A DNA stretch of 56,030 nucleotides from Octopus bimaculoides (GCF_001194135.2 NC_069004.1:5859679-5915708); one strand, 5' to 3'; shown: positions 51,641-52,720, numbered from the stretch's first letter. A program made the numbers and translations. The notes: a model not told the origin generated them from the sequence alone.

Positions 51641-51706
51641 AGGGTAATGGGTGTACATACTATATTTCGGGGGGTTTTGCCCCTTCATCAGCACCCATCT
51701 AACCCT
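51641..51706 (-). ncRNA. Type I hammerhead ribozyme motif, near-intact
   Basis: AGGGU-UAG-AUGGGUG-CUGAUGA-A-GGGG(CAAAACC)CCCC-GAA-AUAU(AGU)AUGU-A-CACCCAU-U-ACCCU. Stem I is 7+5 bp, stem II 4 bp, stem III 4 bp with one U.G, and the triplet is GUA. Confidence 0.82.
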
Positions 51707-52121
51707 TTAATTCTCAAACATATTGCTTAAATTAAATCAGTGCTTCAAGAATATCTGTAGAGATAACCTCAATAAGTAATGTATATATTTCAATTTCGGT
51801 ATTAATTCTATTGGTCTAAAGTGCCGAACCAGTCACATACTAGGGTCTATGGCATCAACTAACTACTTCTGAGCCTGTTCTGTTGAAGAAATCGCAGAAT
51901 CGTTAGAATGCCATAGAAAGCACAGGCAGTCGTCTGGAGAATGGCAAATTCTATGATAGCATCTGTCAGACCTTCAAGACAAAAGACGAGACTCGTAAAC
52001 AAGTAGAATTGGTGCACGGGGAAAGGAAACACTAAAGGCCAGCCCCAGATTTTAGGCGACGTTTTTATCTTAATTTTTCGTTTTCAGTATTATTTTTTCC
52101 TCTACATTTTGTAATAATGAC

Positions 52122-52720
52122 TTCAAATTTTGGCAAAAGGTCAGCAATTTTAGCGGGTGGGGCAATTTTAGGGGCGGAGTAAGTCGATTATATAGACCGC
52201 AGTGTTAAGCTGTTATCGACGGCGAAAGAATGAAAAGCCAAGCCGAACGCGGCGGTATCTGAACTCAAAACGGAAAGACGGACGAAATGCCGCTAAGCAA
52301 TTTGTCTGAGGTCCTAACAGTTCTGCCAGCTCGCCGCCTTAGGTTTTGGTAATAATAAATTTTACTAATCGAAGATATGAAAAAAAATCTGCTTAAAAAT
52401 ATAAAGAAAAATTAATAAAATTGTATAAATAATTGTGTATAAAGAGAAGGTCCGAATTTCTGTTCTAAAATGTTCATTGTGTGTGCGTGTGTGTGTGTAC
52501 ACGCGTGCGCTAAGGTGAGCTGAGCTGGCAGAATATTTAGCTCTCGAACGAAAATGCGTTGTGGCATTTTGTCTGTCTTTACGTTCCGAGTTTGCATACC
52601 GTCGCGGTCGACTTTACCTTTCGAATTCGATAAAATAAACACAAGTTGTGCACTAGGGCAGGTATATAATCGATTAGCCCCCTCCCTCCAAATTTCAGGC
52701 TTTGTACATATAATAGAATG
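52122..52720. mobile_element. Two divergently oriented SINE family A copies (minus 52122-52340; plus 52512-52720)
   Basis: ttctgccagctcgccgcctt and tgagctggcagaata heads about 170 bp apart. Confidence 0.8.

What the first reader, a model, noticed from the sequence alone, without database searches (positions are those of the whole stretch)
51641..51706. Near-intact type I hammerhead ribozyme with extended stem I
Seen: complete core (CUGAUGA, GAAA, GUA triplet). Stem I is AUGGGUG/CACCCAU plus AGGGU/ACCCU across a UAG/U internal loop, which could dock loop II. Stem II is GGGG/CCCC, and stem III is 4 bp with a 3-nt loop and one U.G. An extra A follows A9, which I recall as common in Penelope-associated hammerheads. 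Sixteen Watson-Crick pairs in stems I-II around an exact core make chance unlikely. Predicted cleavage falls between 51654 and 51653. The sequence differs from the other hammerheads here, so three distinct hammerhead families occur within the window.
Basis: partly seen in the sequence, partly recalled or inferred. Interest (0 to 1): 0.85.

Follow-up and report, generated by a model that had tools for sequence, protein, structure and literature searches.

The report
Solo hammerhead ribozyme motif in octopus DNA
A complete, well-formed type I hammerhead self-cleaving RNA motif sits on the minus strand at 51641-51706 of what is evidently an octopus genome, most likely a lone copy left by a ribozyme-carrying retroelement; this is a known kind of thing in invertebrates, and I could not show that it is conserved or active.

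Summary
On the minus strand, 51706->51641 has CUGAUGA, GAAA, an A15.1-U16.1 pair and GUA as the cleavage triplet. Helix I has 5 + 8 pairs around a UA bulge, helix II is GGGG/CCCC, and helix III has 4 pairs with a 3-nt loop. An unpaired A follows A9. Predicted cleavage is at 51654|51653.

Chance is unlikely. A loose descriptor hit 5 times in 1500 shuffled windows, and none approached the real match. A consensus-only covariance model ranks it first in the window (20.9 bits, E~5e-4; next hit 11.8 bits).

Curated Rfam hammerhead models do not detect it, although RF00163 scores textbook phage hammerheads at 25-30 bits. A phage-trained model gives only 10 bits.

The window shares repeat families with Octopus bimaculoides. 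The motif caps a 274-nt, 35% GC, strongly self-paired hairpin (51510-51783). It is single-copy in the window, and no reverse transcriptase lies nearby.

The unpaired base after A9 is a published hallmark of Penelope-like-element hammerheads. Best reading: a solo retroelement-derived (retrozyme or Penelope lineage) hammerhead with weak helix III and uncertain activity.

The claim of three hammerhead families is only partly supported, because the other two motifs are incomplete. I could find no homologous copies, since no octopus genome can be searched here by DNA.

The parts
51641..51706 (-). Whole type I hammerhead motif (HHR-A), read 51706->51641
   Evidence: Sequence read. It is the only descriptor hit in the window. 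It is the top hit of the consensus-only model R2, 20.9 bits, E~5e-4.
51702..51706 (-). Helix I, outer part, 5' strand AGGGU; pairs with ACCCU at 51641-51645
   Evidence: Five Watson-Crick pairs listed; present in the MFE fold.
51700..51701 (-). UA bulge in helix I (read as a UAG/U internal loop if the G.U pair is not counted); a candidate docking site for loop II
   Evidence: The docking role is inference only.
51692..51699 (-). Helix I, inner part, 5' strand GAUGGGUG; pairs with CACCCAUU at 51646-51653 (7 Watson-Crick pairs plus G51699.U51646)
51685..51691 (-). Core box C3 U4 G5 A6 U7 G8 A9 (CUGAUGA)
51684..51684 (-). Unpaired A between A9 and G10.1
   Evidence: The feature is described for Penelope-like-element hammerheads in PMC4209133.
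51669..51683 (-). Helix II GGGG/CCCC (G10.1-C11.1 = 51683-51669) with 7-nt loop CAAAACC; the register is ambiguous because six C follow one another
   Evidence: pairing probability about 0.68.
51666..51668 (-). Core G12 A13 A14
51655..51665 (-). Helix III: A15.1-U16.1, U.G, A-U, U-A with loop AGU
   Evidence: It is marginal: it adds +0.6 kcal/mol and has about 2% probability in the ensemble.
51653..51654 (-). Predicted scissile bond: after A17 (51654), before C1.1 (51653); the triplet is GUA
   Evidence: Follows from the hammerhead numbering applied; not tested experimentally.
51748..51783 (-). 5' arm (in ribozyme sense) of the outer inverted repeat
   Evidence: the repeat finder pair I2: 36 nt, 86% complementary; alignment.
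51510..51545 (-). 3' arm of the outer inverted repeat
51510..51783 (-). 274-nt, 34.7% GC, strongly self-paired hairpin-like element with the hammerhead three-way junction at its apex
   Evidence: MFE -89.8 kcal/mol, z = -6.5. With the hammerhead fold enforced the energy is -87.2. The plus strand folds equally well, z = -7.6.

Best explanation
HHR-A is a genuine hammerhead by descent. It is a lone (solo) copy of a retroelement-borne type I hammerhead of the metazoan Penelope-like-element / non-LTR retrozyme lineage, lying in an octopus genome.

If the minus strand is transcribed, the RNA can fold into the three-helix junction. Helix I extends into a 274-nt hairpin. The RNA would then cut itself once after A17, between 51654 and 51653, by the usual hammerhead transesterification, which leaves a 2',3'-cyclic phosphate and a 5'-OH.

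Only one copy is present, so it cannot excise a unit-length RNA or make a circle from this locus. It is most likely a non-mobile offspring of a once-active family. Its activity as a monomer is probably low, because helix III is weak and an extra A sits next to the core.

Shown: the motif, its non-randomness, the host lineage, single-copy status in the window, and the hairpin context.
Inferred: descent from a retroelement, transcription, and cleavage.
For: - All conserved positions and three helices are present at the stated coordinates.
- Shuffles: 5 of 1500 pass a loose descriptor, and none reaches 6/4/3, against the real 8/4/4.
- The consensus-only model R2 gives 20.9 bits, E~5e-4, clearly separated from the next hit at 11.8 bits. 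The same model finds textbook phage hammerheads at 25-36 bits, including ones I had not selected.
- The same string, CUGAUGA-A-GGGG-loop-CCCC-GAAA, is followed by CGUC (the minimal Penelope-type form) in about 14 metagenome contigs of 36-45% GC. One of these contigs encodes cadherin domains and is therefore animal DNA.
- The window shares SINE and mariner families with Octopus bimaculoides (40 HSPs at 67-84% identity).
- That genome and this window carry two further hammerhead-like cores, and each also has an unpaired base after A9.
- The surrounding 274 nt are low-GC and highly self-paired. This matches the published description of animal retrozyme RNAs (170-400 nt, GC <45-50%, highly self-paired; PMC7229834).
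- Solo 'monomer' retrozymes are reported as common and dispersed (bioRxiv 10.64898/2026.07.22.740005).
- Two wobble pairs (G51699.U51646 and U15.2.G16.2) form a pair only in the ribozyme sense.
Against: - There is no second copy in the window or in 23 kb of O. bimaculoides, so conservation and covariation are unknown.
- Rfam hammerhead models give nothing even at E<=10, although RF00163 works on controls.
- A model trained on 16 phage hammerheads gives 10.1 bits, E 0.89.
- R2 aligns helices I and III and both core boxes but skips helix II, because of the extra A.
- Helix III has about 2% ensemble probability, and the hammerhead fold lies 2.6 kcal/mol above the MFE.
- Helix I has 7-8 pairs before the bulge, whereas canonical metazoan motifs have 6 (PMC4209133).
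- No reverse transcriptase or GIY-YIG ORF was found among the window's long open frames, and there is no tandem arrangement.
- The five mismatches in the outer inverted repeat show no strand bias (2 wobbles in each sense). That part therefore looks like a DNA-level palindrome rather than a selected RNA helix.
- The coral-type matches were fetched with a pattern taken from this very sequence, so they are a lead, not independent proof.
Confidence: 0.58

Rival explanations
1. Chance look-alike. The locus is a foldback or MITE-like DNA palindrome, and its roughly 40-nt apex happens to spell the hammerhead consensus. There is no ribozyme ancestry or function.
For: - Helix I comes 'for free' from a long inverted repeat that folds equally well on both strands.
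- The outer-arm mismatches show no RNA-strand bias.
- It is single-copy with no homologues found.
- Curated hammerhead models miss it.
- Helix III is marginal.
- By my extrapolation, about 1e-5 such motifs are expected per window. A genome of a few Gb could therefore hold on the order of one by chance.
Against: - The window-level expectation is very low.
- Even given a hairpin, the apex must still supply 11 fixed bases in register, a 4-bp G-C helix II and a 4-bp helix III ending exactly at U16.1-H17. My estimate for this is about 1e-8 to 1e-9 per hairpin (inference).
- The extra base after A9 is the lineage-typical deviation, and it recurs in two other hammerhead-like cores of the same genome.
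Confidence: 0.15
2. Host-domesticated cis-acting ribozyme. The hammerhead is kept by selection in an octopus transcript (an intron, UTR or non-coding RNA) and cuts it for processing or regulation, as proposed for the intronic HH9/HH10 hammerheads of amniotes.
For: - The core is intact.
- Helix III, at 4 pairs, is longer than the 1-2 pairs typical of metazoan repeat-borne motifs (PMC4209133), so it could act as a monomer.
- It is single-copy in the window.
- The long helix I would hold the products together.
Against: - No gene, exon or conserved sequence is identifiable around it.
- The neighbourhood consists of SINE and other repeat copies plus microsatellites.
- No cross-species comparison was possible.
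- The Rfam HH9 and HH10 models belong to the hammerhead clan, which gave no hit.
Confidence: 0.07
3. Genomic DNA copy of a small circular, viroid-like or retrozyme RNA that is still active in octopus. The 274-nt quasi-rod would be one unit of a circRNA that is transcribed elsewhere from tandem copies, cleaved by this hammerhead and ligated by a host tRNA ligase.
For: - The size, low GC and strong self-pairing match published animal retrozyme circRNAs.
- It carries a type I hammerhead.
- The hammerhead fold is compatible with the rod, only 2.6 kcal/mol above the MFE.
- Solo monomers are described as offspring of active tandem families.
Against: - There is no tandem copy here and no other copy in about 79 kb of octopus sequence.
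- No transcript data are available.
- The element ends at the open end of the hairpin rather than at the cleavage site.
- The literature held here reports nothing on cephalopod retrozymes.
Confidence: 0.15

Closest known systems
Canonical metazoan type I hammerheads of non-LTR retrozymes and satellite-like repeats (Schistosoma SM-alpha, newt satellite 2, coral and mussel retrozymes; Rfam RF00163)
   Same: - Type I topology with helix I open.
- Full conserved core.
- A 4-bp helix II capped by an A-rich loop.
- A bulge on the 5' strand of helix I.
- A low-GC, highly self-paired surrounding unit of 170-400 nt.
- An invertebrate host with many retroelements.
   Different: - It is not in a tandem array.
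- It has an unpaired A after A9.
- Helix I has 7-8 pairs rather than 6 before the bulge.
- Helix III has 4 pairs with an odd, non-palindromic loop, rather than 1-2 pairs with a palindromic loop.
- The cleavage triplet is GUA, not GUC.
- It scores below about 9 bits with RF00163.
Minimal hammerheads in the pseudo-LTRs of Penelope-like elements (Cervera & de la Pena 2014, PMC4209133)
   Same: [quoted passage not shown]
- A conserved G10.1-C11.1 pair.
- The same CUGAUGA-A-GGGG...CCCC-GAAA string as in animal (coral-type) metagenome contigs.
- These motifs mostly occur as dispersed single copies.
- They are missed by Rfam models.
   Different: - The Penelope motifs lack helix III or have a tiny palindromic one, and are thought to act as dimers. 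They usually have a longer helix II (6-8 bp) and a short helix I (4-5 bp).
- Here helix III is a 4-bp hairpin, helix II has 4 bp and helix I is long.
- No RT/GIY-YIG ORF or pseudo-LTR structure is seen in the window.
CChMVd (+) hammerhead with an extra A between A9 and G10.1 (De la Pena & Flores 2001, as cited in PMC4209133; details from my own knowledge)
   Same: It is a natural, active hammerhead that tolerates an extra unpaired A at the same position.
   Different: It belongs to a plant viroid, has type III topology, and shows no sequence relationship to HHR-A.
Type I hammerheads of phage contigs (L062-L179, e.g. L082)
   Same: The same topology and core. They served as positive controls for the models used here.
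   Different: They have a GUC(C)/(G)GAC helix II, a GC-rich helix III of 5-8 bp, a GUC site and a helix I of 5-7 bp. They score 25-36 bits with R2, against 20.9 for HHR-A.

Membership tests
Hammerhead ribozyme, type I | Conserved core C3 U4 G5 A6 N7 G8 A9 and G12 A13 A14 | tested here: met
   CUGAUGA at 51691-51685 and GAA at 51668-51666.
Hammerhead ribozyme, type I | A15.1-U16.1 pair followed by a non-G residue 17 at the cleavage site | tested here: met
   A51665-U51655, then A51654; the triplet is GUA.
Hammerhead ribozyme, type I | Three helices around the core, with helices II and III closed by loops and helix I open | tested here: met
   Helices of 8(+5), 4 and 4 pairs.
Hammerhead ribozyme, type I | G10.1-C11.1 pair directly flanked by A9 and G12 | tested here: inconclusive
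   The pair is available (51683-51669), but an unpaired A (51684) separates it from A9. A run of six C allows other registers. The deviation is known in natural hammerheads (PMC4209133).
Hammerhead ribozyme, type I | Match to the curated covariance model RF00163 (or another hammerhead-clan model) at the gathering score | tested here: not met
   No hammerhead-clan hit at the gathering score or at E<=10. In the control, RF00163 scores phage hammerheads at 30.2 and 25.1 bits, against a gathering score of 34.
Hammerhead ribozyme, type I | Significant match to a structure-plus-core consensus, independent of family sequence | tested here: met
   Model R2 (synthetic consensus, random stems) gives 20.9 bits, E~5e-4 with rough calibration, and ranks it top of the window. 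The shuffle test agrees.
Hammerhead ribozyme, type I | Tertiary contact between loop II and the helix I loop or bulge (helix I of 6 bp and helix II of 4 bp in canonical metazoan motifs) | tested here: inconclusive
   Helix II has 4 bp with an A-rich loop, and a 5'-strand bulge exists. But the bulge lies 7-8 bp from the core, not 6.
Hammerhead ribozyme, type I | Homologous copies that keep the core and show compensatory changes in the helices | not testable with these tools
   No nucleotide search of octopod genomes is available. There is no copy in the window, in L182 or via ORF look-ups.
Hammerhead ribozyme, type I | Site-specific, core-dependent self-cleavage | not testable with these tools
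   This needs in vitro transcription and cleavage assays.
Penelope-like-element minimal hammerhead | [quoted passage not shown] | tested here: met
   A51684; the feature is defined in PMC4209133.
Penelope-like-element minimal hammerhead | Helix III absent or tiny, with palindromic 15.2-16.2 positions and loop (dimeric mode) | tested here: not met
   Helix III is a 4-bp hairpin with the odd loop AGU, and positions 15.2/16.2 are U.G. A dimer would give 10 of 11 pairs with a central G.G mismatch (my reading of the sequence).
Penelope-like-element minimal hammerhead | Location in pseudo-LTRs flanking an RT plus GIY-YIG ORF | tested here: not met
   No RT or endonuclease domain was found in the ten longest non-repetitive frames of the window. 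Published motifs are nevertheless mostly solo, away from full elements.
Metazoan non-LTR retrozyme | Head-to-tail tandem repeats of 170-400 bp, each with a type I hammerhead | tested here: not met
   It is single-copy: blastn with word size 7 within the window finds only the element's own inverted arms.
Metazoan non-LTR retrozyme | Low-GC unit that folds into a highly self-paired RNA | tested here: met
   274 nt, 34.7% GC, -89.8 kcal/mol, z = -6.5. The criteria come from PMC7229834.
Metazoan non-LTR retrozyme | Expression as linear and circular RNA of unit length | not testable with these tools
   No transcriptome data are available here.

The most novel reading that the evidence does not exclude
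The 274-nt quasi-rod with the hammerhead at its tip is a unit of a still-active cephalopod retrozyme or viroid-like circular RNA family. Such a family has not been described for cephalopods in the literature available here. Its ribozyme would combine the Penelope-type extra base with a monomer-competent helix III, which would make it an intermediate form between minimal Penelope hammerheads and canonical retrozyme hammerheads.
Probability: 0.12. Interest if true: 0.55.

Novelty: new member of a known kind. Interest (0 to 1): 0.3.

Why it matters
If it is real, it adds cephalopods to the animals whose genomes carry retroelement-borne hammerheads. It also offers a motif that mixes features of the two known animal classes: the Penelope-type bulged base, and a proper helix III as in invertebrate retrozymes. 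That mix bears on the recent proposal that animal retrozymes derive from Penelope pseudo-LTRs.

The practical lesson is methodological. Curated hammerhead covariance models miss this motif and the Penelope-type ones, so counts of animal hammerheads based on Rfam are underestimates.

As a single unvalidated locus it does not change any open question.

Tried and rejected
1. **Rfam scans** gave no hammerhead hit. From, where eight phage loci with textbook hammerheads gave nothing at the gathering score, I first concluded that the library could not report hammerheads. One search showed this was wrong. RF00163 is present, with a gathering score of 34, and scores those phage motifs at 25-30 bits. 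The negative for HHR-A is therefore real, and it reflects a narrow, Schistosoma-like model.

2. **Covariance model R1**, built from 16 phage type I hammerheads, scored the candidate at 10.1 bits, E 0.89. I rejected it as a fair test because my fetch pattern had fixed helix II (GUC/GAC) and the GUC site.

3. **First MAFFT alignment** of 45 phage hammerheads: the 3' half was misaligned, so I did not use it.

4. **Homologue hunts:**
   - Exact-product look-ups of two window ORFs found nothing.
   - A protein-space search with the 54-aa frame over 51498-51659 found no candidates. The 35-aa frame across the ribozyme was too short to submit.
   - Contigs reached through mariner and LINE homologues (L180, L181, L183) come from other organisms and share none of the window's SINE families.
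   - Only L182 (O. bimaculoides) is related, and it has no HHR-A copy.

5. **Metagenome pattern scan** returned 61 loci. Most are coding-sequence coincidences in bacteria. About 14 animal-type contigs carry the minimal Penelope-type form. None has a helix III like HHR-A.

6. **MITE hypothesis:** the inverted arms end at 51510 and 51783, with no clear target-site duplication and no other copies. It remains unresolved.

7. **Link to the mariner fragment at 44.7-45.3 kb:** I found no shared termini.

8. **Bacterial-type promoter/terminator and tRNA scans** are not informative for an animal genome.

9. I tried to parse the 'CGAAACG' boxes at 51452-51468, 51576-51599 and 51375-51383 as minimal hammerheads. 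They have no valid CUGAUGA box or helix II.

Full report
**What is there.** I read the region on both strands. On the minus strand, 51706->51641 reads AGGGU-UA-GAUGGGUG-CUGAUGA-A-GGGG-CAAAACC-CCCC-GAAA-UAU-AGU-AUGU-A-CACCCAUU-ACCCU. In hammerhead numbering:
- C3-A9 is 51691-51685.
- An unpaired A is at 51684.
- G10.1-C11.1 is 51683-51669, inside a 4-bp G-C helix II.
- G12 A13 A14 are 51668-51666.
- Helix III is A15.1-U16.1, U.G, A-U, U-A with loop AGU.
- A17 is 51654 and C1.1 is 51653.
- Helix I has 7 Watson-Crick pairs plus a G.U pair, then a UA bulge, then 5 more pairs.

**Is it more than chance?**
- A type I descriptor (CUGANGA, an optional base, helix II, GAAA, helix III starting with A-U, non-G at position 17, helix I) finds this site and nothing else in the window. 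This holds even when one core mismatch is allowed.
- In 1500 dinucleotide-preserving shuffles, 5 cores passed the loosest setting (helices >=4/3/3). None reached 6/4/3, and the real site is 8/4/4. Extrapolating at roughly 0.37 per additional pair gives on the order of 1e-5 per window; this figure is my inference.
- As an independent Infernal test I built a model (R2) from 60 synthetic sequences. They carry only the textbook consensus, with random stems and loops.
  - R2 ranks HHR-A first in the window at 20.9 bits, E~5e-4 (calibration is rough). The next hit is at 11.8 bits.
  - R2 finds textbook phage hammerheads at 25-36 bits, including several I had not selected.
  - R2 aligns both core boxes and helices I and III of HHR-A, but it jumps over helix II because of the extra A.

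**What speaks against it.**
- Rfam gives no hammerhead-clan hit at the gathering score, or at E<=10 even in an 88-nt search.
- I first misread a control as meaning that the library lacked hammerheads. One search corrected this: RF00163 is there (45 positions, gathering score 34) and scores two textbook phage hammerheads at 30.2 and 25.1 bits. HHR-A is therefore truly a poor match to the curated, Schistosoma-like consensus (helix II GUCC/GGAC, CGUC site).
- Penelope-type minimal hammerheads in animal contigs are missed as well.
- A model trained on 16 phage hammerheads gave only 10.1 bits, but that model inherited the fixed helix II and GUC site of my fetch pattern.
- Helix III is thermodynamically marginal. 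It adds +0.6 kcal/mol and has about 2% probability in the ensemble. The hammerhead fold of the 66-mer is -20.6 kcal/mol against an MFE of -23.2.

**Where it lies.**
- The window is an animal assembly. It has N gaps, TG/TA microsatellites that dominate weak miRNA-model hits, a mariner transposase fragment, and no tRNA genes.
- A 23-kb locus of Octopus bimaculoides chromosome CM046603.1 shares 40 HSPs with the window at 67-84% identity, covering SINE-like repeats and the mariner. Contigs from other organisms that share only the transposon proteins show none of these repeats. The window is therefore from an octopod.
- HHR-A is single-copy in the window.
- It sits at the apex of a 274-nt, 34.7% GC imperfect hairpin (51510-51783), whose outer arms (36 nt each) are 86% complementary.
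- The RNA folds at -89.8 kcal/mol (z = -6.5), and at -87.2 with the hammerhead enforced. The opposite strand folds equally well.
- The five outer-arm mismatches give two wobbles in each sense, so the outer arms do not reveal a functional strand. The two wobbles inside the hammerhead (G.U in helix I, U.G in helix III) pair only in the ribozyme sense.
- No reverse transcriptase or endonuclease ORF was found in the window.

**Relation to known hammerheads.** Cervera & de la Pena 2014 (PMC4209133) describe two animal classes:
- Canonical metazoan type I motifs have helix I of 6 bp, helix II of 4 bp and helix III of 1-2 bp with a small palindromic loop.
[quoted passage not shown] Most copies of these are dispersed singles.

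HHR-A has the Penelope hallmark, a canonical 4-bp helix II, and a longer helix III than either class.

A scan of metagenome contigs for CUGAUGA-A-GGGG-(3-9)-CCCC-(0-2)-GAAA returned 61 loci. About 14 are contigs of 36-45% GC in which the match is followed by CGUC, the minimal Penelope-type form. One of them encodes cadherin domains, so it is animal DNA. Because the pattern came from HHR-A, this is a lead rather than independent evidence.

Animal non-LTR retrozymes are 170-400-nt, low-GC, highly self-paired units with type I hammerheads in tandem arrays (PMC7229834). Solo monomers are common and dispersed, and retrozymes appear to derive from Penelope pseudo-LTRs (bioRxiv 10.64898/2026.07.22.740005). 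HHR-A meets the unit-level criteria but not the tandem criterion.

**The other 'hammerheads' in the window.**
- A second core with helix II lies at 8243-8212(-): CUGAUGA-A-GGCUGG...CAGCC-GAAAC. It also has an unpaired A, and it sits inside a repeat (8130-8260). A degenerate copy of that repeat lies at 51293-~51415, just downstream of HHR-A on the same strand. I could not find a valid helix I, or a helix III ending in U-H.
- A third family is seen intact in O. bimaculoides: CUGAUGA-G-GUCACA-GAAG-UGUGAC-GAAA-GAAC-UC-UGGCC at L182 16554-16596. A second copy at 19149-19107(-) carries an A13G change. The window holds only a 5'-truncated copy, starting close to the predicted cut site, at ~32170-32300.
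- So hammerhead-like motifs with the Penelope-type bulged base are recurrent in this genome, which supports a retroelement origin for HHR-A. But only HHR-A is a complete motif here.

**Conclusion.**
- Most likely (about 0.6), HHR-A is a real hammerhead by descent. It would be a solo, probably immobile copy of a retroelement-borne type I ribozyme of the Penelope/retrozyme lineage, able in principle to cut a minus-strand transcript once at 51654|51653.
- Its present activity is uncertain, given the weak helix III, the extra A and the ambiguous helix II register.
- Chance (about 0.15), a host-domesticated ribozyme (about 0.07) and a unit of a still-active circular-RNA family (about 0.15; this overlaps the main reading) remain open.
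- The decisive tests are a nucleotide or covariance search of octopod genomes for copies and covariation, and a cleavage assay against core mutants. Neither could be run here.
- This is a new member of a known kind, of modest interest.

Noticed in passing
window 8212-8243 (-), within repeat 8130-8260; degenerate copy at 51293-~51415 (-): A second hammerhead-like core: CUGAUGA-A-GGCUGG-AGAGUACAU-CAGCC-GAAAC, again with an unpaired A after A9 and a 5-6 bp helix II. I found no valid helix I, and position 17 would be G. The two copies show a compensatory change in a downstream hairpin (UUUGU/ACAAA versus GUUGU/ACAAC).
   Followed up: partly
L182 (Octopus bimaculoides CM046603.1) 16540-16600 (+) and 19107-19160 (-); window ~32170-32300 (+): A third hammerhead-like family: CUGAUGA-G-GUCACA-GAAG-UGUGAC-GAAA-GAAC-UC-UGGCC, with a 1-bp helix III. 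The second L182 copy has GAGA in place of GAAA. The window's copy is 5'-truncated a few bases upstream of the predicted cut site, as expected if the retroposed RNA began near a ribozyme-made 5' end.
   Followed up: partly
window 51452-51468 / 51576-51592, and palindrome 51580-51599: A 17-nt inverted repeat, GTATACGAAACGCTTTT / AAAAACGTTTCGTATAC (94% complementary), crosses the main hairpin's arms. A 20-nt near-palindrome, ACGTTTCGTATACGAGACGT, lies nearby. Both contain hammerhead-like 'CGAAACG' boxes, but no CUGAUGA box or helix II could be assigned. This is unexplained.
   Followed up: partly
window 51560-51569 and 51689-51698: A 10-nt direct repeat, CAGCACCCAT (AUGGGUGCUG in ribozyme sense), occurs 129 nt apart. 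The second AUGGGUG could compete for the CACCCAU strand of helix I, giving an alternative inactive fold. It could also be a vestige of a partial second unit.
   Followed up: no
window 52113-52358 and at least 20 other sites (e.g. 18955-19084, 10530-10696, 22540-22667, 36618-36807): A SINE-like repeat family of about 130-200 nt, at 70-84% identity, dense in the window and shared with Octopus bimaculoides (L182 21134-21336). Two copies in inverted orientation form the 101-nt inverted repeat 52232-52332 / 52522-52622.
   Followed up: partly
window 44757-45326 (-): A truncated mariner/Mos1-type transposase pseudogene (HTH_48 plus the start of the DDE domain). It is 74% identical at the DNA level to a 'SETMAR-like' gene of O. 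bimaculoides. Products about 80% identical occur in unrelated JGI metagenome contigs, which suggests a horizontally spread family.
   Followed up: partly
window 18427-18883 (+): A fragment of a retrotransposon ORF with no Pfam hit. It has homologues (45-74% amino-acid identity among the 120 listed) in many ENA assemblies and in corals (Montipora, Porites). In L183, copies lie close to ORFs with RVT_1 domains.
   Followed up: partly
window 51848-51915 (+): A separate 68-nt hairpin, UAUGGCAU...AUGCCAUA, about 65 nt beyond the upper end (51783) of the HHR-A element. It gave a weak, sub-threshold RAGATH-7-assoc hit (20 bits against 88.5), which is probably meaningless.
   Followed up: no
L082 2403-2452, 2806-2856, 3042-3095, 3828-3881 (+); also L064 and L107: Phage contigs used as controls carry several textbook type I hammerheads in a row on one strand, a few hundred bases apart. 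All of them score below the RF00163 gathering threshold.
   Followed up: no
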